The notes: a model not told the origin generated them from the letters alone. Positions 20,700 to 50,284 are shown, counted from the stretch's first letter. The stretch is 64,000 bases of DNA from Raja brachyura (GCA_963514005.1 OY740795.1:806001-870000), one strand, 5' to 3'. Translations and numbers: made by a program.

Positions 20700-22732
20700 T
20701 CAGTTTGCCGATTTAAATATCTTTCCAGTGTAACGGATTGGAATGGTTAGCACGCGGAACAGCTCCTCTCTGAACTTTTTCTGTGTCACGATGTAAATGG
20801 CCGTGTTGGTGCAGGAGCTCAGCAGCTGAAGCATATATCCAACCCTTTCCAATTCTTCCAAAGGGTATCCCGAGGACTTGTACATAAACACTTTCAAACT
20901 TCGAACCGCTATAAAATGTACAACACTTGTGGCCCAGAGCAGGATGAAGCAGCTCGAGATTGCCAGAAGTAAAACGACCGACCGTCTGCGGTTCACCATC
21001 TCCTGGTCTTTCTTTTTCTCCCCACCGCTTTGGTCTCGGAGGTTCCTGCGGACCCGACTGGCGATGAAAATACGCCTGACAGTAAGCGCGTTAAACAACA
21101 AAATCAGGCAGAATGGAATCGCCGGGGTGAACAACTGTTCGATCCAAGAGTACACCATCCATTCGGGACGCATATAAAACTCTAAAGGTTTGAGGCAGCC
21201 GTGCACCCCACCCGTTCCGGGATAGGAAATGTATGCGAAGGGCAAGGGAAGGTTTTTAAGGCAGACGAACGGGCTCACTGTCAGGATAACAATCGACGCG
21301 CTTCTCTCGGTGCAATATTTTACTTTCATGTTCTGAGTGGAAATCGCAACAAAGCGATCAAATGTGAAAGCGACTGTGAACCATACAGAAGAATCCACCG
21401 CCACGGGAGCAAAATAGAATATAATTTTGCACACAGGAGTGTAGGGCAAGGAAGCAGGCCACAAATAAATATCAGCAATCCGACGAAGTATCACGTCAAT
21501 GAGAAGCACAGAGAGGTCCGCGGTCGCCATGGCTACCATGTAACGAGTGGTGCACTTGGAGAGGCCACACTTGCCACGGGACAGGATCATAATCGCCATC
21601 AGATTGACTGGGAAGGAATAAAAACATAAGATGATTAATTGTGTGCGGTATGCGTCGGTAGGTGAGGGTTATTTAAACGTGCGAATATATGGGACGATCA
21701 AACAACGTTTGCTATAAAGATGTTCAATCGTCAGCAAATTATTAAATAACTGGTTACCAAAATGAGTGAGATTTCCGTTTCTATTTATCTTCACATATTT
21801 CTGCCAACCGTTTAATATTGAAGCTTTGTTATCCCGGCATCATCTCTGCAGCTACAGTCTATATTATATGTACTTGAAAAACCTATCTTAAAATTGCCTC
21901 CCGACCGCAGGGGGAGCATGTACGGTTGTTCACAGTGATGTTTTTTGTTGAACAAGTTGTTCATACGATCTTCAAATCTGTCTCTGCGAAATTATCCCTG
22001 TGAAATTTTAAGAGCTTTACAGATAATGCTGTGGCAAATTACTGGACGGTGTGTGTTTTTGTTTTCTACGGAGTGCACTACGCTCGGCGGAACAGGTAGT
22101 CTCACACACTGCGATGACGCCGTGTCGCTTGCCCCACCAACAGAGCAGGTGCGGGGCATCGTTTGCAGCCAAAATCCGTGCAGGTTAAATTTGTATCAGA
22201 GTCTGTGAGCCGCCATCCGTCAACGAAGCCAACGCGTTCCCTCTCTCCGAAGATGCAAATTGGTTTATTTTAGTGTAGTTTAAATGTACAGCATCGAAGC
22301 GAGTCCTCCGGTCCATCGGGTCCGCGCACACCAGCGACCCACCCAGCCCAACAATATTCGACACACATTAGCGACTTAAAACAAATATATACTAAATCAA
22401 TTAACCTACAATCCTGTCTGTCTTGGAGAGTTTGAGGTAACCGAAAATCTCGGAGAAAACCCACGTTGGTCACGAGAAGAACCTACAAATTATGTAAAGA
22501 CAAGCAACCGTAGTGGGGAGCAAGCCCTGCACCATCTATCGCTGCGCCATCGTGCAGCACTTAACCCTGCCGGGTTATTCAGTATGTTCTCTTAATCTTT
22601 ACTCCTATGCACTTTTCAAACAGTCTTTGTTAATTCAATGTGATGTACCGAAAATTACCTACCGGGTACTCCAATTGCTGCAAGAATCGGGTAATACACA
22701 GATTCTGTATACACGATCTCACTATAATACAT
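20700..22732 (-). CDS. GPR139/GPR142-like class A GPCR, intact, 325 aa (copy 2)
   Basis: Exon 1 at 22732-22663 (MYYSEIVYTESVYYPILAAIGVP, donor GTAGGT). Exon 2 at 21607-20700 after ttcccAG. Phase-1 junction gives GVPVNL. Seven hydrophobic segments, MATADL, TVAFTFDRFVAI, LQLLSSCTNTAIY..TQKKFR. Confidence 0.92.
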
Positions 22733-23769
22733 TTTTGATGCGACGGTCTAGGCGATCACTCCTGGTGCTGCCACTCAGCGATTGTCAGCGGAACAAACCA
22801 ATCTCTGGCACATTTATAAAGTAAATAAAGGAGAAAATAGGCAATTAGATTCCATCCCTGTGGACATTACTTACAGACTTTGGAACAAACATGTACTTGT
22901 TTTCAAAGTAATATTCAGATATCACAATCATGCGGGCGACCGCTCCATACATTTCCAACAGCAGGCAGTGAAGCATGAATTTAAATAAAAAATCCAAACT
23001 AACGCTAGCGCAGTGAAGTTGCTCGCGAGTGTTCCGAGCAGCGATTTATTTCCTTGAACCTTACGTCCGATGACGGGAGAAGGAAAGCTGTCAATTCTGG
23101 CTTGTACCTGTGCAACTTGAGTATCCAGACGGCGATAGCAGAGCCAGAGCGCAACGCAGTATCGGCACCTGAGCATATCCACTGGGCACTTTGAGGCAGT
23201 TTTCTCAGAAAAGTAACTAATGGACGAAAGAGCAGCAAAATAGAGAAGAACCGTCGATTTTATCAAGCATCAATAAAACACGAACATGTAAATTAATTAT
23301 CATGGCAGCGTCGTCTGTCGGCTCCGTCCCGGGGTTAGCAGCCAGGAGTCGGAAAGGATGATACGGACACGGGGGGGGGGGAGGGGGGGGGTCATGAGGT
23401 CATAAGGGTTCGGTGTAAAATAAGGCCATTCTGCCCATTATATCTTATCCGCCTTTCAATCATGACTTATCTATACCCTCTCCAACACCACTCTCTCACA
23501 TTCTGCTCTTAACCACTGACACCTGTTCTAATCAATAATCTATCTATCTCTGCGTGGAAAATATCAACAGAGTTATCCCCCACAGCCTTTGTGACAAAGT
23601 GTTCCACAGATTCAACATAGAGGACTATAAAGGCGTGTTGACCAAATGGGTCTATGAAGACATGAGAGAGGAGCTCATGCTAATCTGAAAAGGACCCGTT
23701 CACACCTGCTCTTTGATTCCTGTCTGCCAAACAATGTTCTATCCATGTCAACACGCTAACCCCACTACC

Positions 23770-25660
23770 AATATTGTCCGCTGTTTGCTTCCAATATTGT
23801 CTATTGTCTATTGAGCTAGCCAAGGTAAACTGGAAAGGGATCCTAACAGGAATGTCGATGAAAAAGCAATGGCTGGAATTTCTGGGCACTATCTGGAAGA
23901 TGCAGGATCATTTAATTCCAAAAAGGAAGAAAGATTCTAGGTGAGTAGGAGGCAAGCGTGGGTGGCAAGAGATGTTAGGGATAGAATAAAACTACAATAA
24001 AAGATGTGTAACACAGCAAAGAGTAGCCGGAAGCCAGAGGATTGGGAAACTTTCATAACACAACAGAAGGAAACAAAACGGGCAATACGGCCCGAAAAGA
24101 TGAAGTACGAGGTGAAGCTGGACAGGAATAGAAGCAAAGACAGTGAAAGCTTATTTAGTTATGTCAAGGGAAAAATAGTAGCCAAGTCAATTGCTAGTCG
24201 CTTGAAGGCAGACACGGGTGAAATTATTATGCGTAACAAGAAATGAAAGAAGAGTTCAACAGGTACTTCGGATCTGACTTCACTAATGGAGCGAGAGAGA
24301 AAACGGGGTATTACAGAGCGGTTAGCCTGACGTCGGTGATAGAAAAGATGCTAGAGTCAAGTATTAAAGAGGTAATAATGGGGCATTTTGATAACAGAAA
24401 AAGGATTAGTCCAAGTCAACATGGATTTATGAAAGAGAAATCATGCTTGTGTCTGTTTTGAGGATGTGACAAGTATAATGGATGAAGAAGAGCCAGTGGA
24501 TGTAGTGTATCAAGACCTTCTTGGAAGCCTTTGATAAGGTCCCGCAATTAGAGCATATGGTATTGGGGGTAGGGTATTGACATGGATAGAAAATTGGTTG
24601 GCAGATAGGTAGCAAAGAGTAGGAATGAGCGGGTCATTTTCAGAATAGCGGGCAGTGGCTAGTGGAGTGCCGAAAGGCTCGGTGTTGTGGCCGCAACTGT
24701 TTACCATATATATCCATGCTTTGGAAGAGGGAATTATGAGCAACCGGCAAGTTGGCAGTGTGAACTGGGAGGAGGATGTTAGGAGGTTGCAGCGTGACCT
24801 GGGCAGATGCGTGGCAGATGCAGTACAATATAGATAACATAGAAACATAGAAACATAGATATTAGGTGCATGAGCAGGCCGTTCGGCCCTTCGAGCCAGC
24901 ACTGCCATCCATTTTGATCATGGCTGATCGTCCGCAATCAATAACCCGTGCCTACCTTCTCCCCATATCCCTTGACTCCACTAGCCCCAAGAGCTCTATC
25001 CAACATTTTCTTAAGTCCATCCAGTGATTTGGCATCCACTGCCCTCTGTGGCAGGGAATTCCATAACTTCCATAACCCATAACTTCTGGGTTAAAAAGTG
25101 TTTTCTCACCTCAGTCTTAAATGACCTCCCCTTTATACTAATACTGTGGCTCCTGGTTCTGGACTCACCCAACATTGGGAAAGGTTTTCCTGCATCTAGC
25201 TTGTCCAGTCCTTTTGTAATTTTATATGTTTCTATAAGATCCCCCTAAACTCCTTCTAAACTCCAGTGAGTTCAAGCCTAGTATTTTCAATCTTTCCTCA
25301 TTTGACAGTCCCGCCATCCCAGAGATCAATCTCGTGAACCTACGCTGCACTGCCTCAATCACAAGGATGTCCTTCCTTGCCATTTAAGACTGAGGTGAGA
25401 AAAAACCTTTTCACTCTCAGAGTTGTGAATTTGAGGATTTCTTGCCACAGAGGGCAGTGGGGGCGAAAGCACTGGATGGATTTAAGAGAGAGTTAAATAG
25501 AGCTCTCGGGGGTAGTGGAATCATGGGATGTGGGGAGAAGGCAGGCACGGGTTATTGATTAGGGACGATCAGCCATGATCACAATGAATGGCGGTGCTGG
25601 CTCGAAGGACCGAATGGCCTCCTCCTGCACCTATTTTCTCTGTTCTATATTTCTATGTTT
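23770..25660 (+). mobile_element. Degenerate CR1 LINE shared with the GPCR3 block, with a nested reversed CR1 3' fragment (~24835-25380)
   Basis: Homologous to 50490-52680. RT motifs YRAVSLTSV and GVPKGSVLWP. Confidence 0.8.
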
Positions 25661-25910
25661 CTATTCGCCACGCTCTGACTAAAGTCATTTCTCATCGGCT
25701 CCATCCGAAAATAACGTCCGTTAATTCTGTAGCAAATACCTCTACTCCGAGACTTTCCCACTCGGAGCAACATCCTCACCACATCCACCTATCCAAGCCT
25801 TTCACTATTGTGTATGTTTCAATGAAGTCCCATCCTCATTGTTCTATACTCCAGTGAGCACAGGCGCAGTGCCGACAAACGCACATCGTAGGTTAAACTA
25901 CTAATTCATG

Positions 25911-27678
25911 ATTAGCATAGTGGATAAGGGAAAACCAGTGGATGTGTTATATCTAGACTTTCAGAAGGCTTTCGAAAAGGTCCCACATTAGAGATTAGTA
26001 TACAAACTTAGAGTACACGGTATTGGGGGTTCAGTATTGATGTGGATAGAGAACTAGCTGGAAGTCAGGAAGCAAACGGGTCCTTTTCTGAATGGCAGGC
26101 ACTGACTAGTGCAAAGTTCAGTGCTGGGACCCCAGCTGTTTACAATATATATTAGTAATTTGGACGAGGGAATTGAATGCAACATCTCCACGTTTGCGAT
26201 GACACTAAGCTGGGGGGTATTTTTAGGTGTGAGGAGGATGCTAGGAGGGTGCAAGGTGACTTGGATAGGCTGGGTGAGTGGGCAAATGCATAGCAGATGC
26301 AGTGTAATGGGGATAAATGTGAGGCTATCCAGTTTGGTGGCAAAAACAGGAGGGTAGACTATTATCTGAATGGTGGCAAATTAGGAAAAGGGGATATGCA
26401 AAGAGATCTGGTGTACAATTTTGGTCGCCCAATTATAGGAAGGATGTCAACAAAATAGAGAGGGTACAGAGGAGATTTACTAGAATGTTGCCTGGGTTTC
26501 AACAGCTAAATTACAGAGATAGGTTGAATAAGTTAGGTCTTTATTCTCTGGAGCGCAGAAGGTTAAGGGGGGACTTGATAGAGGTCTTTAAAATGATGAG
26601 AGGGATAGACAGAGTTAATGTTGACAAGCTTTTCCCTTTGAGAATAGGGAAGATTCAAACAAGAGGACATGACTTTAGAATTAAGGGACAGAGGTTTAGG
26701 GGTAACATGAGGGGGAACTTCTTTACTCAGAGAGTGGTAGCGGTGTGGAATGAGCTTCCAGTGGAAGTGGTGGCGGCAGGTTCGTTGGTATCATTTAAAA
26801 ATAAATTGGATAGGCATATGGATGAGAAGGGTACGGAGGGTTATGGTATGAGTGCAGGCAGGTGGGACTAAGGGAGAAAAGTTGTTCGGCACGGACTTGA
26901 AGGGCCGAGATGGCCTGTTTCCGTGCTGTAATTGTTATATGGTTATATGGTTATATGGTTATCTGGGTGTCATGGTGCAACAATCACTGAAAGTAGGCAT
27001 GCAGGTGCAGCAGGCATTGAAGAAAGCAAATGGTATGTTAGCATTCACAGCGAAAGGATTTTGAGTATAGGAGCAGGGATGTTTTACTGCAGATGTACAG
27101 GATTTAGGTGAGACCACACCTGGAGTATTGCGTACAGTTTTGGTCTCCAAATTTGAGAAAATACAATCGTGCCATAGATGGGGTACAGAGAAGGTTCACC
27201 AGACTGTTTCCTGGGATTTCAGGCCTTTCATATGAGGAAAGACTGGATGGACTTGGCTTGTACTCGCTAGAATTTAGAAGGCTTAGGGGGGATATTATAC
27301 AAACTTACAAAATTCTTAAGGGGTTGGATAGGCTAGATGCAGGAAGATTGTTCCCGATGCTGGGGGGGGGGGGGTGCAGAACAATGGCTCACAGTCTAAG
27401 GATAAGGGGAATTCCTTTAGGACCGAGATGAGGAAAACATTTTTCAAAAGAGAGTGGTGACTCTCTGGAATTCTCTGCCACAGAAGGTAGTTGAGGCCAG
27501 TTCAATGGCTATATTTAAGAGGGAGTTAGATGTGGCCCTTGTGGCTAAAGGGATAAGGGGGTATGGAGAGAAGGCAGGTACAGGATACTGAGTTGGATGA
27601 TCAGCCATGATCATATGCCGGTGCAGGTTCGAAGGGCCGAATGGCCTACTCCTGCACCTATTTTCTATGTTTCTATGA
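25911..27678 (+). mobile_element. CR1 LINE insertion specific to the GPCR2 block, containing a nested young CR1 3' end (26412-26960)
   Basis: Empty site near 52925 (ctactaattcttggtaaacttcc). ATGAT flanks both ends. The nested piece is nearly identical to 10407-10951 and is flanked by ATCTGG. Confidence 0.85.
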
Positions 27679-27819
27679 TAAACTTCCTCTGGACCCTATC
27701 CACACCCAACACATCCATCCTCAGATATAGTGGACAAAATTGCTCACAATATTCAAAATGCGGCTTTCTCGGTGCCTTAATAGAGACTCAGCATGACAAC
27801 CCTGGTTTGGATACAAACC

Positions 27820-28585
27820 CATATATCCATATAACCATATAACCATATAACAATTAACAGCACGGAAACAGGCCTTCTCGGTCCTTCCAGTCCGTCCCGA
27901 CCATTCATTTTCCCCTAGTCCCATCTAACTGCACTCAGACCGTACCCCTCCATTCCCTTCCCGTCCATATACCTATCCACTTTTCTTCTAAATGTTAAAA
28001 TCGATCCTGCCTCCACCACTTCTGCAGGAAGATCATTCCACACAGCCACCACTCTTTGAGTAAAGAAGTTCCCCCTCAAGTTATCCCTAAACCTCTGTCC
28101 CTTAATTCTCATGTCAAGCCCTCTTGTTTGAATCTTCATTACCCTCAATGGGAAAAGCTTATCCACGTCAACTCGGTCTATCCCTTTCATCATTTTAAAG
28201 ACCTCAATCAAGTCCCCCCTTGACCTTCTGCGCTCCAAAGAATAAAGACCTAACTTGTTCAACCTTTCTCTGTAACTTAGTTGCTGGATGCCAGGCAACA
28301 TTCTACTAAATCTCCTCTGTACTCTCTCTATTTTGTTGACATCTTTCCTATAATTAGGCGACCAAAATTGTACACCATACTCCAGAATTGGTCTTACGAA
28401 TGCCTTGTACATTTTAACATTACTTCCCTACTGCTATATTCAATGTTCTGATTTATAAAGGCCAGCACACCAAAAGCTTTGGTTACCACCCTATCTACAT
28501 GCGATTCTACCTTCAGGGAACTATGCGCAGTTATTCCGAGATCCCTCTGTTCCACAGCATTCCTCAGTTCCCGACCATTTACCCT
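27820..28585 (-). mobile_element. CR1 3' fragment of the (ATGGTTAT)n-tail family
   Basis: ORF 27915-28412 closely matches 10480-10866. Absent at the paralogous site near 53068. Confidence 0.85.
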
Positions 28586-30951: not shown

Positions 30952-33069
30952 CCGGAGCACGCGTGGCAAAAGTGTAGTTCTCATTTTAAAAATAAACATA
31001 GACGTGGTGATTGCGAGGATACACCTCCACGTCAAAGTACAATGAACGTTCCCAGCAAATAACGGGATTGTGTCTGTTCGAGGCTTATATAAACGTCCGT
31101 ACGCTTTACCTTGTCATCTTTCCCCAATTACGTTACATGGCCTAATTCAAGTTTTGTCTATAAACGCCTGTCATTTGCCGACACCACACCGCCTGCGATG
31201 AAGCAACAGATTCTCATGATATTCCACATTAAGAGCATTCTGACGAACTCACCAGTGGGTTACTTAGCGAAGAAGTGGACATGTGTTCCATGACACAGGA
31301 CATAAATACCACAGGAGGAAATGTCCCCTTATTGACCTCTCGGGCAAAAACCTTATAGTGTGGATGATCCATGCTGCAAGCTGTCTTATAGGGAACGGAA
31401 CTTCTCTCACTTGATATCCCCGAATGGTTGAAATCCTGCAGATTGCATTCAAAATAATCATCTACATTTGCATGTTCCTCCATGTTTCAGGAATCCAGGC
31501 TGCTTCCTCCAATATATTTGTGGAAAATTAAGTCAATTTGGAAACGTTGTCATTCTAACGGACGAAGGCACTTTTCGCTTCTTCAGACAGATGGTGGCGC
31601 TGGGAGATAGTAGAGGCAGGATAAATCGTCAAACATAATAAGTGCACAAAGGCGAGGAAGGTTCTTGTTAAAGAAGGAACTGCAGATGCTGGAAAATCGA
31701 CGGTACACAAAATGCTGGAGAAACTCTGCGTGTGCAGCAGCATCTAAAGAGCGAAGGAGATAGGCAACGTTTCGGGCCGAAGTGCTTCTTCAGACTGTTG
31801 GGGGGTGGGGGCATGCGGGGGGAAGACATTTAAAAGGAGGAGGAGAAGCCCGAGGGCTGAGGGAGAGGTTGGAAGGGTAGGAGACAGCAAGGGTTAACAG
31901 AATTGTGAGATCGATGTTCGTGCCAAGGAACGAGGTAAGAGGTATAGGGGCAGGTGAGCGAGGGAGGAGAAAATGTGATGCGTCCCTGTCACTTGACCGG
32001 CCATATAGTCTTGCCTTGTTGGAAGTGAGGGCGCGCGAACCTGCCATAGGTGCCGAAAGGCCTTCCCTCCTTCTGTTTCAGTTGGTCAATTTTACCCTTT
32101 GTGATATCACAAAATGCTGTAACATTGCTACAAATACTCCAGCATTTTGTGTTCATTTCTGATCTGCTGTGTTCATCCGATTTTTACAAATAGAACAATC
32201 CCACTATCACCAAGATGTGTTCCCGAACCCACCTACCTGATCAGCTACATGCTTCTCCCACCGCATTACCACAATGATGATGCCATACTCTCATAGCGCG
32301 AGAGACCCGGGTTCGTACCTGACATCGGGAGCTGTCTGTGAAGAGTTTGCACTTTCTCCCTGTGATCGTGTCGGTGCCTCCACGTGCTCTGGTATATTCC
32401 CACATGCCAAAGATCTGCTGGTTTGTACGTTATTCGGCCTCCGTAATTAGCATCCGGTGTGTAGAATGGGGACTCTCGGATCAGTTGGAGGTCGTTGGAT
32501 GATTTGCCCACAAATAAATTTGAAAACACGCCCTTCGACGCATTTTGCCCACACCGGCCCACATGTCCGAGCTGCACTACTCCCACCTGCCCGCGATTGA
32601 CCCATGTCTCTCCAAACATGTCCTATCCATCTCCGTATCTAACTGTTTATTAAACGTCGGTATAGTCCCTGCCTCAAATACATTTTCTGGCTGCTTGTTG
32701 CGTACACCCACTTACTTTGGTAATGAAAAGTTAGCCCTCAAATTCCCATTAAATATACTCCGCTTCACTTAAAACCTCTGTCCTCTGGTCCTCCATTCAA
32801 CTAGTTATTTTTTATCTGAAATTATTTGAGAAATAATGTTAACAGATATTCTAAGATATTTAACAATCCCCACCATGCAGGAGATAACAAATATGTGTAA
32901 ATATTTCACAGAAGACTCTGTCTCGGCCCTCGCATTGCTCCAATGGAAATTGTCAGTGCATTCCGGATGCGGATCACCTTCTTGCATGGCTCTATATGCC
33001 AACCGCAAATTAACGTAAATGACACCAGATTAAGGCGGCAACAATGTTGGTGATGGGGTTGGAGTTTAA

Positions 33070-33280
33070 CACCACACACACGCATACACAGACACACAGA
33101 CATAAACATACACACACGCACACTCACAGACACACGCACGCGAACGCACACACACACAGACACACACACAGAAGCACACGCACGCACACACACGCAACCA
33201 CAGGCACCCACACGCACGCACGCACACACACACGCACACACGCATGCACGCACGCACACACTAGACACACACACGCACAC
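33070..33280. repeat. (CA/CG)n microsatellite
   Basis: Directly visible. Confidence 0.95.
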
Positions 33281-35009: not shown

Positions 35010-35125
35010 CCGGCGGCGGTGGCGGCGGTGGCAGCGGTGGCGGCGGTGGCGGCGGTGGCGGCGGTGGCGGTGGTGGCGGCGGTGGCGGCGGTGGCGGCGG
35101 TGGCGGCGGTGGCGGCGGTGGCGGC
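35010..35125. repeat. (GGCGGCGGT)n GC-rich tandem expansion inside an interspersed repeat (~34612-35583)
   Basis: Directly visible; it generates the poly-G, poly-P and poly-AAV ORFs. Confidence 0.9.
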
Positions 35126-35584
35126 GCGGCTTCCGAGGCCCTGCCTCCGAGGCCCGGCCTCCGTCCCAGCGGACGACATCGTCGGGAGCTCACAGGTCTC
35201 AGGTTGGTGACCTGTTTACTTGAGCTCCCGCAACAACAGCTTCGTCCGTTAAGGGCTTCGACCACCCCGGGCCGCGGAGTTTGGACCGGCCCGTTCGCGG
35301 AGCTGGATTCAGCCGCGGGACTGACTTACTTACCATCACCCGGCGGGGTCACAACATCGGAGGCCTGGATCGCATCAGCGCAGAGGGAGAACAAGGAGGG
35401 AAGGGACAAACACTAAGACTTTTGCCTTCCATCACACTGAGGAGGTGCCAGGTGAACTCACTGTGTGGATGTTAAATTTGTATTTATTCTGTGTTTTTGT
35501 TATTTGTATTATATGTATGACCACAGGCACGAAATTTTGTTCAGACCGAAAGGTCTGAATGACAAAAAAGGTCGCATTTCATTT

Positions 35585-36599: not shown

Positions 36600-36935
36600 T
36601 TTTACCTCGGAGTCACGTGAGTGACTACGTGAAGAACCCCGTACAGCCGTTCGTGCGTCATTGCGTCAGACGTTTTTCGTGCAGACGACTGTGGAGCAGC
36701 GCAGCTCCAACATGATAAGTCTAAACAAGTTGCAGGTAAGTGCTATTTTTCTTACCTGTTCTAGGTCTCTGCAGGAACGTCCGGGGGTTTTGCAGTGGAT
36801 GTTCGCGATAGCCGACGAGGGAACCAGCCTAGGGCTTTGGGGGAAAACCCTGGTCCGACCGCGGAAGCGGAGAGCTGGCGAAAGTCGGGCTCGCGATCGG
36901 AGTCACTGATAACGCGGTCAGTGACTCCACACGTT

Positions 36936-37430
36936 GGGTTCCCGGGTAGGGGAACCCGAGAATAGTGCGGTTTTAGACCGCAGTAGTCCGCAGGGGGTGG
37001 GGCTTAACGGACCTGAACGGTCAGCCTGGGTTCCCGGGGAGGGGAAACTCAAGTATAAGCGGTTCTAAACCGCAGTAGTCCCGCGGACATTGGATTAAAA
37101 CTAACCTAAATGGTTAAGCTGGGTTCCCGGTGCAGGGGAAACCCAAATATATGCGGTTTTACATCGCAGTAGTCCCCAGCGCATGGGGTTAAAACAAACC
37201 TAAATGTTTAGGCTGGGTTCCCGGTGCAGGGGAAACCCAGGTATATGTGTGGTTCCCAGACCACAGTAGTCCCCAGGTAATGGGGTTAATTCACATAAAT
37301 CATTAGCCTGCGTGCCAGGAGGGTACCGCGGATATATATTTATATATATATATTATATTTATATGGATTCCTGGGGAGGGGAAATTCACCTATGGGGTTC
37401 CCAAACTACAATAATCCCCAGGATATGGGG
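36936..37430. repeat. ~93-bp tandem repeat, ~5 diverged units, each with inverted-repeat stems
   Basis: gggttcccgg recurs at 36936, 37028, 37121 and 37215, with a degenerate unit near 37310. Confidence 0.8.
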
Positions 37431-37495
37431 ACAACTGACAAAATAGTCAGTACAATTGGGAAAGTTGGGAGATTTCACCTCTGGGAATTAATTTA

Positions 37496-38015
37496 GAGAG
37501 CAGCACTTTTGGGTAGGGCTGCTTCATGGGAATGTCAAGTTATGGCAGTGCCAGCCTATGGGAAAGACTGTGCCAGCAGTACCTTTGTTTAGGACTGCTC
37601 ATGGGGATGCCAAGCTATGGCAGGCTAGCCTGCTGGAGAGGCTGTGCCAGCAGCACCTTTGCTCAGGACTGCTCATGGGGATGCGAAGCTATGGCAGGCT
37701 AGCCTATTGGAGAGGCTGTGCCAGCAGCACCTTTGCTCAGGGCTGCTCATGGGGATACCAAACTATGGCAGGCTAGCCTATTGCAGAGGCGGTGCCAGCA
37801 GTACCTTTGCTCAGGACTACTCTAAGGGAATGCCAAGTTATGGTAGGCTAGCCTATTGGAGAGGTTATGCCAGCAGCATCTTTGCTCAGGGCTGCTTGAT
37901 GAGAATGCCAAATCTATGGCAAATACTGGCCTATGGGAAAGTCCGTGCCAGCAGCTACTTTGTTCAGGGCTGCTTCATGGGCACCAGGGGTACCTTGTTA
38001 GGGCTGCTTTATGGG
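37496..38015. repeat. ~74-bp tandem repeat, ~7 units
   Basis: gtgccagcag recurs at 37570, 37644, 37718, 37792, ~37867 and 37945. Confidence 0.88.
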
Positions 38016-41000: not shown

Positions 41001-41744
41001 ACTCCGAAGTAAAATAGTAATATTAAACGAGAACTTACCAGTTTGAAGTTTGATCTTTATTTTATGAGGAATCGAGTTGAGGGACTACGTGCCCTCCGCT
41101 CCCAGCCCTAATACATTTCATCTGGTAGTTCTAGTCTTTATCTTACCATTATACTTCAGTTATTATTTGCTGTGATTTCACACCGTTGCTTTGAAGATTG
41201 ACGCACGGACGGCTGTACGGGGTTCTTCTCGTAGTCCCTCAACTCGACTCCTCATAAAATAAAGATCAAACTTCAAACTGGTAAGTTCTCGTTTAATCTT
41301 ACTATTTTACTTGTGACATCCTCAAAAAATTCCAGAAGATTAGTCAAGCACGAGCTCCCTTTTATAAATACGTGTTGACTTGGACTAATCCTTTTACTGC
41401 TGTCCAAGTGCTCCATTATTACCTCTTTAATAATTGACTCCAGCATCTTTCCCACAACCGAAGTCAGGCTAAATGGTCTGTAATACCCCGTTTTCTCTCT
41501 CGCTCCTTTCTTGAAAAGTGGGATAACATTAGCTATCCTCCAATCCACAGGAACTGATCCTGAATCTATTGAGCATTGGAAAATGATCACCAATGCGTCC
41601 ACTATTTCTAGAGCCACCTCCCTGAGGACCCTGGGATGCAGACCATCAGGCCCAGGGGATTTATCATCCTCAGTCCCTTTAGTCTACCCAATGCTATTTC
41701 TCGCCTAATGAAAAATTATTTCAGTTCCTCTACCCGAAACACTA

Positions 41745-44150
41745 AGGGGAATAAAACGCTAGTGGGAGTTGTGTACAGGCCGCCTAACAGTAGTAGTGAA
41801 TTGGGGATGGTATCAAACAGGAAATTAGAATTGCGTGCGATAAAGGCAAAACAGTTATAATGGGTGACTTCAATCTACATATAGATTGGGTGAATCAAAT
41901 TGGCAGGGGAGCTGAGGAAGAGGATTTTTTGGAAAGTATGCGGGATAGTTCTCTAAATCAACATGTAGAGGAACCAACGAGAGAGCAGGCTATTTTAGAC
42001 TGGGTATTGAGTAATGAGGAAGGGTTATTTAGCAGTCTTAATGTGCGTGCCCCTTTATGCAAGAGTGACCATAATATGGTCGAGTTCTACATTAGGATGG
42101 AGAGTGACATTGTTAATTCAAAACAATGGTTCTGAACTTAAAGAAAGGTAACTTTGAGGGTATGAGACGTGAATTGGCCAAGATTGACTGGCAATCAATT
42201 CTAAAAGGGGTGACGGTGGATACGCAACATTTAAAGACTGCATGGATGAACTACAAAAATTGTTCATCCCAGTTTGGCAAAAGAATAAATCAGGGAAGGT
42301 AGTGCATCCGTGGATAACAAGGGAAATCAGGGATAGTATCAAAGCAAAGGATGATGCGTACAAAGTAGCCAGAAAAAGCAGCATTCCAGAGGACTGGGAG
42401 AAATTCAGAGACCCGCAGAGGAGGACAAAGGGCTTGATTAGGAAAGGAAAAATAGATTAAGAAAGAAAACTGGAAGGGAACATTAAAACTGACTGCAAAC
42501 GTTTTTATAGATATGTGAAGAGAAAGAGATTAGTTAAAACAAATGTAGGTCCCTTGTAGTCAGAAACAGGTGAGTTGATCATGGGGAACAAGGATATGGC
42601 GGACCAATTGAATAACTACTTTGGTTCCGTCTTCACTAAGGAACACATAAATAATCTGCCGGAAATAGCAGGGGAACGCGGGTCAAAGGAGGACTTGAGT
42701 GAAATCCAGGTTAGTCGGGAAGTGGTGTTGGGTAAATTGAATGGATTAAAGTCCCATAAATCCCCAGGGCCAGAGAGGCTGCATCCCAGAATACTTAAGG
42801 AAGTAGCTCCGGAAATAGTGGATGCATTAGTGATAATATTTCAAATCTCTTTAGAATCTGGATTAGTTCCTGAGGATTGGCGGGTAGCAAACGTAACCCC
42901 TCTTTTTAAGAAGGGGGGAGAGAGAAAACGGGGAATTACAGACCAGTTAGTCTAACATCGGTAGTGGGGAAACTGCTAGAGTCAGTTATTCAAGATGGGA
43001 TAGCAGCACATTTGGAAAGTGGTGAAATCATTGGACAAAGTCAGCATGGATTCACGAAAGGTAAATCATGTCTGACGAATCTTGTGGAATTTTTCGAGGC
43101 TGTAACTAGTAGCGTGGATAATGAGGAACCAGTGGCTGTGTTATATCTGGATGTTGTCCCTCATAAGAGATTAATATATAAACTTAAAGCATACGGCATT
43201 GGGGGTTCAGTATTGATGTGGATAGAGAACTGGCTAGCAAACAGGAAGCAAAGAATAGGAGTAAACGGGTCGTTTTCACAATGGCAGGCAGTGACTAGTG
43301 GGGTACCGCAGGGCTCAGTGCTGGGAGCCCAGCTATTTACAATATATATTAATGATCTGGATGAGGGAATTGAAGGCATTATCTCCAGGTTTCCGGATGA
43401 CACTATGCTGGGGGGCAGTGTTAGCTGTGAGGAGGATGCTAGGAGACTGCAAGGTGACTTGGATAGGCTGGGTGAGTGGGCAAATGTTTGGCAGGTGCAG
43501 TATAATGTGGATAAATGTGAGGTTATCCACTTTGGTGGCAAAAATAGGAAAGCAGACTATTATCTAAATGGTGGCCGATTAGGAAAAGGGGAGATGCAGA
43601 GCGACCTGGGTGTCATGGTACACCAGTCATTGAAAATTATTGCCATAGAGGGAGTGCAGAGAAGATTCACCAGACTGATTCCTGGGATGTCAGGACTGTC
43701 TTATGAACAAAGACTGCATAGACTCTGTTTCTACTCTCTAGAATTTAGGTGATTGAGAGGGGATCTTATAGAAACTTACACAATTCTTAAGGGGTTGGGC
43801 AGGCTAGATTCAGCAAGATTGTTCCCGATGTTGGGAAGGTCCAGGACAAGGGGTCACAGCTTAAGGATAAGGGGGGAATTCTTTAGGACCGAGATGAGAA
43901 GGACTTTTTTCACACAGAGAGTGGTGGGTCTCTGGAACTCTCTGCCACAGAGGGTAGTTGAGGCCACTTCATTGGCTATATTTAAGAGGCAGTTAGATGT
44001 GGCCCTTGTGGCTAAGGGGATCAGAGGGTATGGAGAGAAGGCAAGTACGTGATACTGAGTTGGATGATCAGCCATGATCATATTGAATGGCAGTGCAGGC
44101 TCGAAGGGCCGAATGGGCTACTCCTGCACCTAATTTCTATGTTTCTATGT
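41745..44150 (+). mobile_element. Long CR1 LINE ORF2 (endonuclease C-terminus plus RT), degenerate
   Basis: GVVYRPPN, MGDFN, SDHN (APE endonuclease); QHGFTKGKSCLTNL, GVPQGSVLG; (TTTCTATG)n tail. Contains stops and frameshifts. Confidence 0.92.
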
Positions 44151-44472
44151 TTACCCCTTTAGATCCTCTGTCCTCCAGTACATCTGACAGATTGTTTGTA
44201 TTCTCCTTAGTGAAGACAGATCCGAAGTACCTATTCAACTCTTCTGCCATTTCCTTGTTGCCCATGATTATTTCACCCGTGTCTGCCATCAAGTGACCCC
44301 AATTTGACTTTGCTACTCTTTTTCCCATAAGATATCTAAGTAAACTTGTATTGTCCTTCTTTATATTCCTGGCCAGCTTCCCCTCGTACTTCATCTTTAC
44401 CGGCCGTATTGCCCGTTTTGTTCCCTTCTGTTGTCCTATGAAGGTTTCCGAATCCTCCCGCTTCTGGCTACT

Positions 44473-45175
44473 GTGGAGACATTTGTGGAGTAGTTTATGT
44501 TAATGGGAACCATCGTCTCCAATGACAATGAACGGGGTGGGGGGGGGGGGGGCTACCGTCGACTCCTCGGTCAAAAAGGCACAACACAGGATGTACATCC
44601 TACGGCAGCTGAGGAAGCACAATCTGCCACAAGCAATGATGGTCCAATTCTGCATTGCCATCGTAGAGTCTGTTCTCACCTTCTCCATCATGGTCTGGTT
44701 TGGCTCAGCCACCAAGCACGTCACCTGGAGGGTGCAGCGAACCATCCAATCAGCAGATACGTTTATTGGCTGCAACCTTCCCTCCATTGATGAACTGTAC
44801 ACTTCAGGGGCCAGGAAGCGAGCGGGCAAGATCATCTCTAACCCCTCTCACCCTGGTCACAAACTCTTTGAATCACACCCCTCTGGAAGGCGACTCCGGA
44901 TTGTCAAAGCTTCCACAGCCAGACATTAAAACAGTTTTTATCCACGAGCAGTTGCTCTACTCACCAGTCAAAAGTCTGTTGCCTCCCTTTGATCTGGTAT
45001 TTTGTTGGGTCACATACTTGATCAATGGAGTTTTATTATTAATGTTTTATTATTATACATGTTTAGTGTTTTCTGAGCCATTCGTAACTGTCACTGTATG
45101 TCATGTTGTTACTTGTGGGCGGAGCACCAAGGCAAATTCCTTGTATGTGACTACTTGGCCAATAAACCTACCTAC
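44473..45175 (+). mobile_element. Rex1/Babar-like LINE 3' end
   Basis: ORF 44522-44929 KKAQHRMYILRQLRK...IVESVLTFSIMVWFG...HPGHKLF. Confidence 0.82.
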
Positions 45176-47194
45176 TGTTACTGTTACTTGCTGTTCATTT
45201 ACACGCTGAATGGCCACATCGCGCTATATCACACGGGTATTGCGTAGACGTTGTTTCACATTCGCTGATTTGATAATTGTTGTAATTGCACTTTGCGTAA
45301 AACATCAACGCTATCTGCTTGAGACTATAGTTGAGGGCAAAAGTAAATGAATGCGGGCATCTCCCTCTCTTTCTGCTGTTTTATTGCTCAAGCTGAACAT
45401 AGAACGAAAACAACGCCGTGAATTCCAGACATTGTAAAACCTTCCCCTTCGACAATCACCATTACCAATGAGCACAAGCAGATTGGTCGGAAATCGTATT
45501 TCAATAAAATGCAGCCCTCAAAATAGAACAAACCATCAAATGGATCCTTCGAAGATAGACGAATATGCTCGAGAAATTCAGCGGGTCAGGCGGCATCTAT
45601 GGAGCGAAGGGGTTCCCGCCCGCCCCCAGCCCCACATCAGTCTGAAGAAGGGTCACGACCCGAACCGTCACCCTTCGCTCCACAGATATTGCCTGACCGG
45701 GTGAGATTCTACCGCCTTTTTGTCTAGCTTCGATTTTTTCAGCATCTGCAGTTCTTTCTTAATTAAATGGAACCCATGCCGTTTATAAATTACAGCGGGA
45801 ATTTTAGGTACAAATTATTTTGCCAACTTGTTCTTCGTTCCGATTTACAATTCCCTAATGGTTAATTGGATGTTCGTTGAAACCAACACAGCCACATTTC
45901 ATTGGGTTTATGGAAGGAGCAGCCAAAATAGCTGGTTTGGAAAGGAACCGGAGATACTGGTTTATACTGAAGATTGACGCAAACTGCTGGAGTGACTCGG
46001 CGGGTAAGGTAGCATCCCTAGAGAAAAGGGACATATCATGTTTCTGGTCGGGACCGTTCTTCCACCTGAAAGTAGAGCCGAAGGCAATGGACGTCTGTAA
46101 AGGCCTCAACAATGCAGGGCCCGCTATAGGTCGCCAAGAAGAATTGAGGCCATAATCACCCATTGTTGTCTGGGAAGAGGTGATACCGAACGAATACAAA
46201 CATGCGAGAAATTCAACTAGTATGATGACTACGTTGGGGGAGAGAGGGAGAAAAATGTAGGGAATCCTGGGGTCATTTGGAATCAGAGCATTCAATGATC
46301 AAACCACCGAATTGTAAGATGCACAAGCGAAATGTATGGTGCTGTTCCTCCATTTTGTGCGTGGCCTCATTCTAACCGTTGAGGAGGAACAGGGCAGAAA
46401 GGTTTATATGGGAATGGCAAATTGAGTTAAAATGTGTGCAGCCGGGACATCGCGTTACCCAAGGCGGTATTTGAGTTGCTACCTTTGGCTGGAGCGTGTT
46501 TGCTTTACGGCATACCTCATCTGTGCTTTTACTTTCGAGAGACACTTTCCGCACTCAGAAGGTATTTTCAATACGCTGTCTGTTTGGAACTTCACCCAAT
46601 CTAAATCATCCGCTGCAAAAACAGCAGGTTCTCTTGAAACCAAAGGCCCCGTCAATGCGCAATCAGACGTTTTTTCCCCAATCATGAAAGGGAATAACAA
46701 ATACAACGTGCTCGTATTTAACTGATAACTCGTCGTTCTCCACTCGTTTTGAAAATAATATGTTCGAGGCATATGAAAACATATTCGTAAAAAAAACAGT
46801 TGATAGATTCAACTGAGCACGTGGGCATGCGTAGATCAGGTCGGAGTCAATTGAGCCCATGAACGTATTAAGGAACTGGGCGTAAAATGTCCACAACTTA
46901 AATGTTAGGTAGACAAAAAATGCTTGAGAAACTCAAGCGGGCATCTATGGAGCGAAGGAATAGGTTGCTGGAAAAACTCAGCGGGTGAGGCATCGTCTGT
47001 GGGGCAAAGGGATTCCTATTCTTTCGCTCCATCGATGCTGCCTCACCCTCTGAGTCTCTCCAGCATTTTGTCTACCTTCGATTTTTCCAGCAGCTGCAGT
47101 TCTTCTGAAGCTAATGTTTCAACTAAATATTTGTTTGTTCACACAAATACGATAACGAAACGACGCACGCGTTGATGTGATATTATTTTTAATA

Positions 47195-49470
47195 TCACTT
47201 TACCGATTTAAATATATTTCCAGTGCAACGGATCGGATAAGTTAGCACACGGAACAACTCATCTCTGAACTTGCTCTGAGTCACAGTGTAAATGGCCGTG
47301 TTGGTGCAGGAGCTCAGCAGCTGAAGCATAGATCCAACCTTTTCCAATCCTACCATAGGGTTTGCCCAGGACCTACGTATAAACAAACCCAGACTTCGAA
47401 CAGCAATAAAATGTGCGACACTTGTGGCCCAGAGCAGGATGAAACAGCTCGAAATTGCCAGAAGTAAAACGACCGACCGTCTGCGGTTCACCATCTCTTG
47501 GTCTTTCTTTTTCTCCCCACCGCTGAGGTCTCGGAGGTCCCTTCGGACTCGACTGGCCACGAAAATGCGCCTGATGGTGAGCGCGATAAACAACAAAATC
47601 ACGCAGAATGGAATTACCGGGGTTAACAACTGATCGGTCCAAGAGAACACCATCCATTCGCGACGCATATAAAAATATACGTCTTTGACACAGCCCAGAT
47701 TCAGTTCAATTGGGAGGTAAGAAACGTATGCGAAGGGCAAAGGTAGATTCTGAAGGAAGATGCATGGGGTCATTGTCGTGATAACAATCGACGCGCTTCT
47801 CTCGGTGCAATATTTGGCTTTCATATTCTGAGTAGAAATCGCAACAAAGCGATCAAAGGTGAAAGCGACTGTGAACCATACAGAACAATCCACCGCCACG
47901 GGAGCCAGGAAGAGTATTATTTTGCACACAGGTGTGTAGGGCAAGGAAGCGCGCCACCAATGAATATCAGCAATCCGATTTAATATAACGTCAATGAGAA
48001 GCACAGAGAGGTCTGCGATTGCCATGGCTACCATGTAACGAATGATGCACTTGGAGAGGCCGCACTTGCCACGGAACAAGATCACAATCGCCATCAGATT
48101 CACTGGGAAGGAATGAAAACATAAACTGATTAATTGTGTGTGGTATGGGTTGGTGGGTGAGGGCAATTTAAACGTGCGCATATTTGTGACGAAATGTTCC
48201 CTATTTCCTTCGCTCCATAGATGCTGCCTCACCCGTTCAGTTCCGCCAGCATGTGTGTCTACATTTGAGAACATGATGTCAAGCAATGGCATTCCGTGCA
48301 GCACTGCAATTATAATTACATACATCCTTCAACGATAAACAAGGGTAACAATTTAACGAGTAGTATTTTCTGCTGAATAGCGGGCGGGCCTCCGTGTTTT
48401 ACCTGACAATACAATTCCTGAAGTATCTCAGTGGCTCAAGTAGCAACTCTGGATAACATGGGTAGGCGACGTTTCAGTTCGGGCCCTTTCTTCAGTCTCC
48501 GATTGGAGGAAGGATCCCGACATGATACGTCGCCTACGTCGGTCTTCCGGAGATGCTACAAGACCCGCTGAGTTACCCAGTGCTTTGTTATCCCGGCATG
48601 ATCGCTGCAGCTACAGTCTCTGTTATCTGTACTTAAAATCTATCTTAAATTTGCCTCCCAACAGAGGGGGAGCATGTCTGGTTGTTCACACTGACGTTTT
48701 TGGTTGAGTAAGTTGTTCATACGATCTTCAAATCTGTCTCTGCGAAACTATCCCTGTGAAATGTTAAGAGCTTTACAGAAAATGCAGTACCAAATTACTG
48801 GACGGGTGTATTTTTCTTTCCACCGACTGCACTACGCTCTGCGGAACAGGTAGTCTCACACACAGCGAGGACCCCGTGTCGCTTGCCCTGCCAACAGAGC
48901 ATGTGCGGGGCATCGGTTGTAGCCAAAATTCGTGGAGGCTAAATTTGTACCAGAGTCTATGAGCGGCCATCCGTCAATCAAGCCAACGCGTGTCCTCTCT
49001 CCGAAGATGTAAATTGCTTTATTTTAGTGTAGTTTAGATGTACAGCACCGAAGCGAGTCCTCCGGTCCATCGAGTCCGAGCAGACCAGCGACCCACGCAG
49101 ACCAACAATATTCGGCACACACTAGCGACTTAAAACAAGTATATACCAAATCAATTATCCTACATACCTGTCTGTCTTGGAGATTTGGAGGAAACCGAAG
49201 ATCTCGGAGAAAAGCCACGCTGGTCACGAGAAGACCCTACAATTTCTGTAGTGGGGAGCGAGCCCTGCACCATCTACCGCTCCGCCATCGTGCTGCACTT
49301 AACCCTGCCGTGTTATTCAGTATGTTCTCTTAATCTTTCCTCCTCTGCGCGTTTCAAACATTCTGTGTTTGTTCAACGTGATGTGCCGACAATTACCTAC
49401 CGGGTACACCAATTGCTGCAAGAATCGGGTAATACGCAGATTCTGCATCCAAGATAGCAATATTATCCAT
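47195..49470 (-). CDS. GPR139/GPR142-like class A GPCR, intact, 325 aa (copy 3)
   Basis: Exon 1 at 49470-49401 (MDNIAILDAESAYYPILAAIGVP, donor GTAGGT). Exon 2 at 48102-47195 after ttcccAG. Same motifs and exon lengths (70 + 908 bp) as copy 2. Confidence 0.92.

Positions 49471-50248: not shown

Positions 50249-50284
<36 letters not shown>

What the first reader, a model, noticed from the sequence alone, without database searches (positions are those of the whole stretch)
20700..49470. Orphan GPR139-like receptor paralogs with hypervariable extracellular surfaces
Seen: copies 2 and 3 have identical exon lengths and match at 49/52 aa across ICL3-TM6. They match at only 4/12 in the N-terminus, 6/18 in ECL2 (ISYPGTGGVHGCLKPLEF vs VSYLPIELNLGCVKDVYF; pseudogene FPYRGWGGPHGCRKRVHF) and 7/20 in ECL3 and the top of TM7. 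The non-coding DNA just upstream (22781-22900 vs 49518-49637) is visibly more conserved than the ECL2 codons. Known: GPR139/GPR142 are single-copy amino-acid/peptide-sensing receptors in mammals. Inference: this is a birth-and-death repertoire with a constant signalling face and a diversifying ligand face, as expected of an uncharacterised chemosensory or immune-recognition receptor system. It is the best candidate here for an undescribed system.
Basis: partly seen in the sequence, partly recalled or inferred. Interest (0 to 1): 0.85.

Follow-up and report, generated by a model that had tools for sequence, protein, structure and literature searches.

The report
Skate orphan GPCR paralogs, GPR139-related
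Two intact genes and one broken copy of an orphan receptor family that has expanded in sharks, skates and chimaeras sit in tandem here; they differ mainly on the outward, ligand-facing side, but the data show two old, conserved subtypes and do not show ongoing hypervariability.

Summary
Copies 2 and 3 are intact two-exon (70 + 908 nt, 325 aa) class-A GPCR genes on the minus strand. Copy 1 is a pseudogene.

- Extracellular parts have dN/dS about 1.0-1.2 (bootstrap CI 0.44-2.45), against 0.36 elsewhere. Their dN (0.43) is far above flanking non-coding divergence (about 0.11), but their local dS is raised too.
- Copy 3's ECL2 is nearly unchanged in its Leucoraja and Amblyraja counterparts (86% identity, against 85% overall).
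- So copies 2 and 3 are two old subtypes whose diagnostic residues concentrate in ECL2 and ECL3. They are not a hypervariable surface.

Family context:
- At least 1,509 distinct sequences score E <= 1e-35, and every one checked is chondrichthyan.
- The nearest outside relatives are single genes in coelacanth, salamanders and teleosts.
- Human GPR139 is the closest solved receptor by profile only (70 bits), and four of its five agonist-contact residues are not conserved.
- I found no paper describing this expansion.

No RNA run was available, so expression is untested. The cluster lies among TCR V segments. Other first-reader notes report the same interleaving elsewhere in this genome.

The parts
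22663..22732 (-). Copy 2 (type A), coding exon 1. It encodes the N-terminus (12 aa) and the first half of TM1. 70 nt, phase-1 donor CCG|gtaggt.
   Evidence: The homologues' N-termini (e.g. P0001, P0003) align to it.
21608..22662 (-). Copy 2 intron (1,055 nt). It holds an ultra-high-copy repeat at 22378-22521.
20700..21607 (-). Copy 2 coding exon 2 (908 nt including TGA). It encodes the end of TM1 through TM7, helix 8 and the C-terminus.
   Evidence: ORF. Pfam 7tm_1 E = 1.3e-15. AF2 model pTM 0.78.
21168..21233 (-). Copy 2 ECL2 codons (residues 125-146 of the exon-2 product). Predicted beta-hairpin carrying the conserved Cys.
20859..20897 (-). Copy 2 ECL3 codons (residues 237-249).
22733..23032 (-). 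Conserved 300 bp upstream of the copy 2 ATG (5.7% divergence from copy 3). Candidate promoter or 5' UTR.
49401..49470 (-). Copy 3 (type B), coding exon 1, 70 nt.
47195..48102 (-). Copy 3 coding exon 2, 908 nt. An ORF also reads upstream through the acceptor to 48325, but homologues support the spliced model.
47663..47728 (-). Copy 3 ECL2 codons. Its core motif ELNLGCVKDVYFYMR is identical in L. erinacea P0003 and differs at one residue in A. radiata P0004.
47354..47392 (-). Copy 3 ECL3 codons.
1985..2798 (-). Copy 1, pseudogene remnant of exon 2. In-frame TGA at 2456-2458. A 3' deletion removed TM7. Its ECL2 is A-like.
   Evidence: Pfam 7tm_1 on the 5' piece.
4491..4937 (-). Copy 1 upstream and exon-1 homology (75% identical to 22541-23001).
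19488..25910 (.). Duplicated segment carrying copy 2. It is colinear with 46022-52928 (copy 3) at an offset of about 26.5-27 kb.

Best explanation
The stretch holds a tandem cluster of an orphan class-A (rhodopsin-type) GPCR family, with two intact genes and one pseudogene. The family is distantly related to GPR139/GPR142, occurs as single or low-copy genes in coelacanth, salamanders and some teleosts, and has expanded in cartilaginous fishes.

After the duplication, most subtype-diagnostic changes accumulated in the ECL2 hairpin and in ECL3. The N-terminus also diverged strongly. The TM core, ICL1-3 and TM6 stayed under purifying selection.

Inferred mechanism:
- Each protein is a 7TM receptor with a very short N-terminus.
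- It has a canonical TM3-ECL2 disulfide and a beta-hairpin ECL2 of the kind seen in peptide receptors.
- Ligand specificity is set by the loops and the outer TM halves.
- All family members signal through a shared, highly conserved intracellular face.
- The two subtypes most likely recognise different ligands.

The large, lineage-specific, tandemly evolving repertoire makes an environment-sensing or chemosensory-like role the leading guess. That step is inference, not shown.
For: Gene models and intactness:
-.
- 7tm_1 is above Pfam's cut-off.
- The AF2 7TM model has pTM 0.78 and a two-strand ECL2. Foldseek's best matches are peptide and chemokine receptors.

Family size and range:
- 2,181 hits at E <= 1e-5 and 1,509 at E <= 1e-35. 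The best 120 are all chondrichthyan.
- 98 clusters at 50% identity score E <= 1e-30. All 10 sampled are chondrichthyan.
- The nearest outsiders are Latimeria (34% identity), salamanders (32%) and teleosts (28-30%).
- In the tree, the chondrichthyan clade has support 92/85 and is sister to the salamander genes at 100/99.

Subtypes:
- Copy 3 groups with P0003 and P0004 (94/97; 99/95 with P0003).
- ECL2 identity is 86% within type B, 56% within type A and 44% between A and B.
- 7 of 11 strictly A/B-diagnostic residues lie in ECL2 plus ECL3, which make up 11.6% of the length (p = 6e-5).

Selection:
- Omega is 0.36 outside the extracellular parts and 0.06-0.17 in TM6 and ICL3.
- Family entropy is lowest on the intracellular side.
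Against: - No expression data. No run on record as RNA holds the gene, and the laid runs were DNA contigs.
The subtype argument therefore rests on protein trees, and type A is unresolved (a polytomy).
- Loop omega is indistinguishable from 1, so neutral drift in some loops, ECL3 especially, cannot be excluded.
- Synonymous divergence (4-fold sites 0.19; dS 0.27) is about twice the non-coding divergence (0.10-0.12). This is unexplained and may mean the history is mosaic.
- Other notes of this scan suggest many more copies nearby, so 1:1 orthology with the other skates' genes is not certain.
Confidence: 0.7

Rival explanations
1. Ongoing diversifying (positive) selection keeps the extracellular surfaces hypervariable, as in an immune-type or fast-evolving chemosensory repertoire.
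For: - Loop dN is 0.43, against non-coding K of about 0.11 (p = 4e-9) and gene-wide pS of 0.22 (p = 0.01).
- The N-terminus has 8.5 non-synonymous changes against 0.5 synonymous.
- ECL3 omega is 1.6.
- Type-A ECL2 is only 56% identical among three skates, and ECL3 only 51% within type B.
Against: - Omega for the loops is 1.03 (CI 0.44-2.45). For all extracellular parts it is 1.24, not above neutrality (p = 0.44).
- Local dS is raised in the same patches (0.42-0.56).
- On the copy-3 branch, loop omega is 0.64.
- Type-B ECL2 is as conserved as the rest of the protein across three genera.
Confidence: 0.15
2. The pattern is largely a mosaic history. Gene conversion or recent co-duplication homogenised the 5' flank, the intron and most of exon 2 between copies 2 and 3. 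The ECL2 and ECL3 patches kept, or imported, an older type-B sequence. The loops therefore look over-diverged without any excess of amino-acid change.
For: - Site patterns. Upstream DNA shows c2=c3|c1 87 times against 9 and 7 for the other two patterns. In ECL2 (13 against 7) and in the ECL3 region (10 against 5) c2=c1|c3 dominates.
- Both pS (0.27 against 0.10) and pN rise in the loops on the copy-3 branch.
- Non-coding divergence is only half the synonymous divergence.
- Five residues are shared by both window copies and differ from all four counterparts in other skates.
Against: - The counts are small. Only 9 synonymous changes fall in the loops, and 7 ECL2 codons were ambiguous.
- Copy 1 is a pseudogene on a long branch, which alone inflates the c2=c3|c1 pattern.
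- No donor sequence was identified.
- TM6 and ICL3 have ordinary dS (0.25-0.27), so their conservation reflects purifying selection, not conversion.
- This reading is compatible with the best explanation and does not exclude it.
Confidence: 0.3
3. The genes are passengers of the TCR V-array. They are copied by the unequal crossing-over that expands V and NAR-TCR cassettes. Their loops drift neutrally and many copies decay. The repertoire has no ligand-diversification function.
For: - V segments with 23-spacer RSS lie between and after the GPCR copies.
- One of the three copies is a pseudogene.
- Loop omega is about 1.
- Other first-reader notes report co-amplification with NAR-TCR units across more than 800 kb (untested here).
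Against: - Omega is 0.36 outside the loops, and both intact copies keep all class-A hallmarks.
- Type-B ECL2 is conserved across genera.
- The family is expanded on many chromosomes and scaffolds in many species, not only next to TCR genes. The records show many different contigs.
Confidence: 0.15

Closest known systems
GPR139 / GPR142 (vertebrate orphan class-A receptors for aromatic amino acids and peptides)
   Same: - GPR139 is the best solved-structure match of the family profile (E = 1.4e-18, 70 bits; next is CCR5 at 53 bits).
- Both have the TM1 motif YYxxLxxxGxPxNxL, and both lack Pro7.50 in the NPxxY position (NTAIY here, NFFLY in GPR139) (alignment).
- Both have a short N-terminus.
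- NCBI names nearly all members 'probable GPR139'.
   Different: - Identity is only about 20%. With a single sequence, GPR139 (8.7e-5) ranks below the PrRP and ghrelin receptors.
- Four of five agonist-contact residues are not kept. F109 3x33 aligns to P/S, H187 5x43 to E/D, R244 6x51 to S, and N271 7x38 to Y/S/L/C/F. Only W6.48 is kept.
- The family has the TM3-ECL2 cysteine pair, where GPR139 aligns an Asp to the TM3 Cys.
- It has hundreds to thousands of copies, whereas GPR139 is described as highly conserved across vertebrates (PMC12208981).
'GPR210A/B'-type orphans next to GPR139/142 in coelacanth, gar and a few fishes (Cartography of rhodopsin-like GPCRs, PMC6504862)
   Same: - That paper lists extra orphan subtypes beside GPR139/GPR142 in coelacanth, gar and fishes.
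- The nearest non-chondrichthyan relatives found here are a coelacanth protein (P0220), salamander proteins and teleost proteins. Each scores only 53-70 bits against human GPR139.
   Different: - I could not check whether P0220 is one of the Ensembl entries named in that paper.
- Those genes are single or few per genome. The chondrichthyan branch has at least 98 clusters at 50% identity.
Birth-and-death chemosensory GPCR repertoires (OR, TAAR, V1R/ORA) and expanded non-olfactory class-A families (FPR, MRGPR)
   Same: - Lineage-specific expansion.
- Tandem clusters with pseudogenes.
- A conserved intracellular face and variable outer TM halves and loops.
   Different: - Two coding exons with an intron in TM1, whereas OR and TAAR genes are generally described as having one coding exon (my own knowledge, not tested here).
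- Peptide-receptor-like beta-hairpin ECL2.
- No expression data in any sensory tissue.
- No dN/dS above 1 was shown.

Membership tests
Class A (rhodopsin-like) GPCR, Pfam 7tm_1 | Match to PF00001 above the gathering score | tested here: met
   58 and 47.5 bits against a cut-off of 30.5 for copies 2 and 3. The 5' piece of copy 1 scores 31.4 bits.
Class A (rhodopsin-like) GPCR, Pfam 7tm_1 | Seven-helix fold and hallmark residues (D2.50, DRY-type motif, C3.25-ECL2 Cys, W6.48, N7.49..Y7.53) | tested here: met
   The AF2 model has pTM 0.78, with helices TM1(part)-TM7 plus H8. Hallmarks read: MATADL, FDRF, C59/C137, LLW, NTAIY. Pro6.50 and Pro7.50 are replaced by Thr.
GPR139/GPR142 group | GPR139 is the closest characterised receptor | tested here: met
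   By family profile, GPR139 is first at 70 bits and CCR5 second at 53 bits. By single sequence it is not first.
GPR139/GPR142 group | Orthologue-level conservation (GPR139 is described as highly conserved across vertebrates) | tested here: not met
   About 20% identity to human GPR139. The coelacanth, newt and anchovy relatives of this family also score only 53-70 bits against it. No true GPR139 sequence could be placed in the tree, so the branching order with GPR139 and GPR142 is untested.
GPR139/GPR142 group | Agonist-pocket residues F109 3x33, H187 5x43, W241 6x48, R244 6x51, N271 7x38 (PMC5430874) | tested here: not met
   Mapped by hand from the HMMER alignment onto. The aligned residues are P/S, E/D, W, S and Y/S/L/C/F, so only W6.48 is kept. 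The residue list was checked.
GPR139/GPR142 group | Single or low copy number, expression in brain (habenula) | tested here: not met
   Copy number: 1,509 distinct sequences at E <= 1e-35 and three copies in this window. Expression could not be tested.
GPR139/GPR142 group | Same intron position (two coding exons, split in TM1) | not tested
   The intron here is phase 1, after GVP in TM1. I had no GPR139 gene structure to compare it with.
Birth-and-death chemosensory-type GPCR repertoire | Large lineage-specific expansion in tandem clusters with pseudogenes | tested here: met
   The duplicated segment is defined.
Birth-and-death chemosensory-type GPCR repertoire | Variable ligand-facing positions and a conserved G-protein face | tested here: met
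   Entropy is 2.36 bits in the ECLs, 1.58 in the outer TM halves, 0.80 in the inner TM halves and 0.43 in ICL1.
Birth-and-death chemosensory-type GPCR repertoire | Positive selection (dN/dS above 1) at ligand-facing sites | tested here: inconclusive
   Pairwise omega is 1.03-1.24 with a CI spanning 1. Site models were not possible because there were only three codon sequences.
Birth-and-death chemosensory-type GPCR repertoire | Expression in sensory (olfactory, taste, skin) cells | not testable with these tools
   No run on record as RNA holds the gene. The laid runs were DNA contigs. The catshark sensory-organ paper does not mention the family, and its supplements are not held.

The most novel reading that the evidence does not exclude
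The chondrichthyan expansion of this GPR139-related orphan clade has at least 1,500 distinct sequences in about 20 sequenced species. It may be an undescribed environment-sensing, chemosensory-type receptor repertoire. Such a repertoire would help explain how sharks, skates and chimaeras manage with very few canonical OR, TAAR and ORA genes. In skates one branch has been drawn into the TCR alpha/delta V array and is amplified together with it.
Probability: 0.25. Interest if true: 0.85.

Novelty: new member of a known kind. Interest (0 to 1): 0.55.

Why it matters
Published work reports very small canonical olfactory receptor repertoires in cartilaginous fishes. The catshark has 2 OR genes plus a few OR-like genes, and V2R is its main family (PMC11979771).

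A class-A family with about a hundred 50%-identity clusters that is restricted to this lineage, has a constant signalling face and variable loops, and is absent from the literature I could search is an obvious candidate for a missing receptor repertoire. Existing shark and skate RNA-seq and in situ methods could test this directly.

For this locus, the useful result is a correction. The two genes are not a hypervariable pair. They are two old subtypes whose ECL2 and ECL3 carry the subtype signature. That gives a clean design for deorphanisation: swap the loops between subtypes A and B.

The position inside a TCR V array also offers a case of non-immune genes being amplified by the dynamics of an antigen-receptor locus.

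Tried and rejected
The CDS of the A. radiata and L. erinacea counterparts could not be fetched, so codon site models and orthologue dN/dS were not run. PAML is not installed either.
- The look-up of sequencing runs listed no run on record as RNA.
- Read laying on 20650-22780 returned only short DNA contigs from four runs. There were no splice joints and no usable cross-species consensus, because paralogous pieces at 90-95% identity are mixed in. Raised summed depth over exon 2 fits many related copies, but it is not a copy number.
- Single-sequence PDB search gave no clear nearest receptor: PrRP receptor 3.7e-7, ghrelin receptor 2e-5, GPR139 8.7e-5. Only the family profile singled out GPR139.
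- Foldseek against the PDB could not discriminate. GPR139 ranked 13th among generic peptide receptors.
- The ESM Atlas gave only generic 'GPR139', 'FMRFamide receptor-like' and Srw-type clusters.
- Literature searches found nothing on this expansion or on GPCR genes inside shark TCR loci. The terms were GPR139 with shark, cartilaginous or expansion, 'GPR139-like', 'coupled receptor 139', and NAR-TCR with GPCR.
- I rejected gene conversion as the cause of the 49/52 ICL3-TM6 identity. dS there is ordinary (0.25-0.27) and omega is 0.06-0.17.
- The joined (spliced) protein was not sent to any search or folding tool. Exons were analysed separately by reference and only their counts were summed.
- The two N runs (12620-12819 and 14608-14921) were left untouched.


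Full report
**What is there**

The window is repeat-rich vertebrate DNA. The best protein matches of its receptor ORFs are 'probable G-protein coupled receptor 139' entries of the skates Amblyraja radiata and Leucoraja erinacea, at about 80% identity. No listed hit is closer than about 82% identical. The source is therefore probably a skate or close relative whose proteins are not in the protein collection. I did not determine the species.

tblastn finds three copies of one receptor gene, all on the minus strand.
- Copy 2: exon 1 at 22732..22663 and exon 2 at 21607..20700.
- Copy 3: exon 1 at 49470..49401 and exon 2 at 48102..47195.
- Both have 70 + 908 nt, GT/AG splice sites and a phase-1 intron inside TM1. 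Each encodes 325 residues.
- The N-termini of annotated homologues align to exon 1, which supports the spliced model.
- Copy 1 (about 1985-2798, with upstream homology at 4491-4937) has an in-frame TGA and has lost TM7 through a deletion.
- Copies 2 and 3 sit on colinear duplicated segments, 19488-25910 and 46022-52928, about 26.5-27 kb apart.

**The observation**

- N-terminus 4/12.
- ECL2 6/18.
- ECL3 and top of TM7 7/20.
- ICL3-TM6 49/52.

The 300 bp upstream of the ATG differ at 5.7% of sites. Well-aligned intron and upstream DNA differ at about 10-11%. Exon 2 differs at 14.4%, and the 100-nt window around ECL2 at 30%.

**Is the extracellular face under diversifying selection?**

I took the topology from an AlphaFold2 model of the copy-2 exon-2 product, folded with 60 homologues (pLDDT 78, pTM 0.78). 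ECL2 is a two-strand hairpin at residues 125-146, and ECL3 is residues 237-249.

Nei-Gojobori counts for copy 2 against copy 3:

| Region | dN | dS | omega |
|---|---|---|---|
| ECL1-3 | 0.43 | 0.42 | 1.03 (bootstrap CI 0.44-2.45) |
| Outer TM halves | 0.114 | 0.273 | 0.42 |
| Inner TM halves | 0.065 | 0.219 | 0.30 |
| Everything outside the loops | 0.09 | 0.245 | 0.37 (CI 0.23-0.57) |
| N-terminus + ECL1-3 | 0.416 | 0.336 | 1.24 |

- The N-terminal 12 codons carry 8.5 non-synonymous and 0.5 synonymous changes.
- With the N-terminus added, omega of 1.24 is not above the neutral expectation (p = 0.44). It is clearly different from the rest of the gene (Fisher p = 0.005).
- Loop non-synonymous divergence greatly exceeds the non-coding divergence (p = 4e-9). 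It also exceeds the gene-wide synonymous proportion (p = 0.01).
- However, local dS is raised in the same patches.

I then used the pseudogene as a third sequence.
- The excess in the loops lies on the copy-3 branch and affects both classes of change: pS 0.27 and pN 0.175, omega 0.64.
- Nucleotide site patterns switch from c2=c3|c1 in the flank, the intron and most of the exon to c2=c1|c3 in ECL2 and ECL3.

Omega is not above 1, but loop divergence is far above that of neutral-looking DNA. A mosaic history (gene conversion elsewhere, or an old type-B patch) explains part of the pattern. It cannot be separated from an old burst of adaptive change with three sequences.

**Comparison with other skates changes the picture**

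- In protein trees, copy 3 groups with L. erinacea P0003 and A. radiata P0004 (94/97; 99/95 with P0003).
- Copy 2, the pseudogene, P0001 and P0002 form the unresolved remainder of a skate clade that has 100/100 support.
They are also the same for P0002 and P0003 (208 kb). This fits linkage of the two types in both species.
- Within type B, ECL2 is 86% identical, against 85% overall. Its core ELNLGCVKDVYFYMR is identical in copy 3 and P0003 and differs at one residue in P0004.
- Within type A, ECL2 is 56% identical. Between types it is 44%, and ECL3 is 32%.
- Of 11 residues that strictly separate A from B across species, 7 lie in ECL2 and ECL3 (p = 6e-5). Of 26 looser ones, 14 do (p = 2e-7).

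Copies 2 and 3 are therefore two old receptor subtypes whose signature is in the loops. Type B's ECL2 has been under purifying selection since the three skates diverged. 'Hypervariable' does not describe it. ECL3 and type A's ECL2 are the more labile parts.

**What the family is**

- Both intact products match Pfam 7tm_1.
- With one sequence, no solved receptor stands out: PrRP receptor 3.7e-7, ghrelin receptor 2e-5, GPR139 8.7e-5.
- With a 61-sequence family profile, human GPR139 is clearly first (1.4e-18, 70 bits) and CCR5 is next (53 bits).

Features shared with GPR139:
- The TM1 motif around the intron.
- The lack of Pro7.50.

Differences from GPR139:
- Identity is about 20%.
- The family has a canonical TM3-ECL2 cysteine pair.
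- Four of the five GPR139 agonist-contact residues are lost. These residues are F109, H187, W241, R244 and N271 (PMC5430874).
- Position 7x38 differs in nearly every close paralogue: Y, S, L, C or F.

Family size and range:
- 98 clusters at 50% identity score E <= 1e-30.
- 1,509 clusters at 90% identity score E <= 1e-35.
- All 120 best hits and all 10 sampled representatives are from sharks, rays, skates or chimaera.
- The nearest outsiders are single proteins of coelacanth, salamanders and teleosts. Each scores only 53-70 bits against human GPR139.
- In the tree, the chondrichthyan sequences form one clade (92/85), sister to the salamander genes (100/99).
- A 2019 survey lists extra orphan subtypes beside GPR139/142 in coelacanth, gar and fishes ('GPR210A/B'; PMC6504862). 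These are probably the same outgroup, but I could not check that.

Across the family, the intracellular face is very conserved (ICL1 0.43 bits, inner TM halves 0.80 bits). The loops are variable (2.36 bits).

**Mechanism, shown and inferred**

Shown:
- The genes are intact.
- Purifying selection acts on the core.
- The proteins have a 7TM fold with a hairpin ECL2.
- The loop sequences are subtype-specific.
- The family is large and lineage-restricted.

Inferred:
- Ligand recognition is by the loops and the outer helices.
- All members share a common transducer.
- Subtypes A and B have different ligands.
- The repertoire has an environment-sensing role.

**Expression**

No run on record as RNA holds the gene. 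The four runs laid were DNA contigs without splice joints. Summed depth over exon 2 was 5-25 times that of the neighbouring intron. This fits many related copies, but it is not a copy number.

**Context**

Germline V segments with 23-spacer RSS lie between and after the receptor genes on the opposite strand, at 12012, 13989 and 62632. Other first-reader notes of this scan report the same interleaving, and co-amplification with NAR-TCR cassettes, over more than 800 kb of this chromosome. I confirmed only the interleaving inside this window. Amplification as a passenger of the V array is therefore a live rival for the birth of copies, although not for their conservation.

**Literature and limits**

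- I found no paper on this expansion or on GPCR genes within shark or skate TCR loci. The library lacks most subscription journals.
- The spliced protein was not joined for any search. Exons were handled by reference and only their counts were summed.
- The N runs were not touched.

**Verdict**

- This is a new member of a known kind: an expanded class-A receptor repertoire.
- It has moderate interest that would rise sharply if sensory or immune expression were shown.

Noticed in passing
window 12012-12417, 13989-14395, 62632-62960 (+ strand): Germline immunoglobulin-superfamily V segments (Pfam V-set, E = 1.5e-13, 2.2e-7 and 2.3e-13). Each is followed by a heptamer, a 23-bp spacer and a nonamer-like RSS. 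The first two are about 90% identical duplicates. The third is a different V family (31% identity). They lie between and after the minus-strand GPCR genes, so the cluster sits inside a TCR alpha/delta-type V array.
   Followed up: partly
window 22378-22521 (intron of copy 2): Ultra-high-copy element. Summed contig depth is about 8-9 x 10^4 in X1 and X7, against about 23 for the neighbouring single-copy intron in X1. It was seen in all four DNA runs laid, which include runs of at least three coded organisms. Probably a SINE-like repeat.
   Followed up: no
window 26409-26959 and 10404-10953: Two retroelement fragments that are 98.5% identical. They encode the C-terminal part of a LINE ORF2-like protein with the motif RLRGDLIEVFKMMRGIDRV. 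This points to a recently active element. Many older copies fill the 23-46 kb spacer between copies 2 and 3.
   Followed up: no
window 36935-37276, 37499-37981, 35012-35126, 33069-33280: Minisatellites of 94 bp x 3.6 and 74 bp x 6.4, a (GGCGGCGGT)n array, and an AC-rich microsatellite. They create long spurious ORFs in several frames.
   Followed up: partly
window 12620-12819 and 14608-14921: Two runs of N (200 and 314 bases), flanked by GA/CT-type simple repeats, just 3' of the two duplicated V segments.
   Followed up: no
window 20700-24000 against 47195-50722: Synonymous divergence between copies 2 and 3 (4-fold sites 21/113 = 0.19; dS 0.27) is about twice the divergence of the adjoining intron and upstream DNA (0.10-0.12). 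Excluding CpG sites narrows the gap but does not close it (0.126 against 0.095). Unexplained. It may reflect conversion of the 5' part or constraint on the non-coding DNA.
   Followed up: partly
window 47195-48325 (- strand): In copy 3 an ORF reads through the splice acceptor to an upstream ATG, giving 376 aa. The extra 75 residues have no counterpart in homologues, so the ORF is probably fortuitous.
   Followed up: partly
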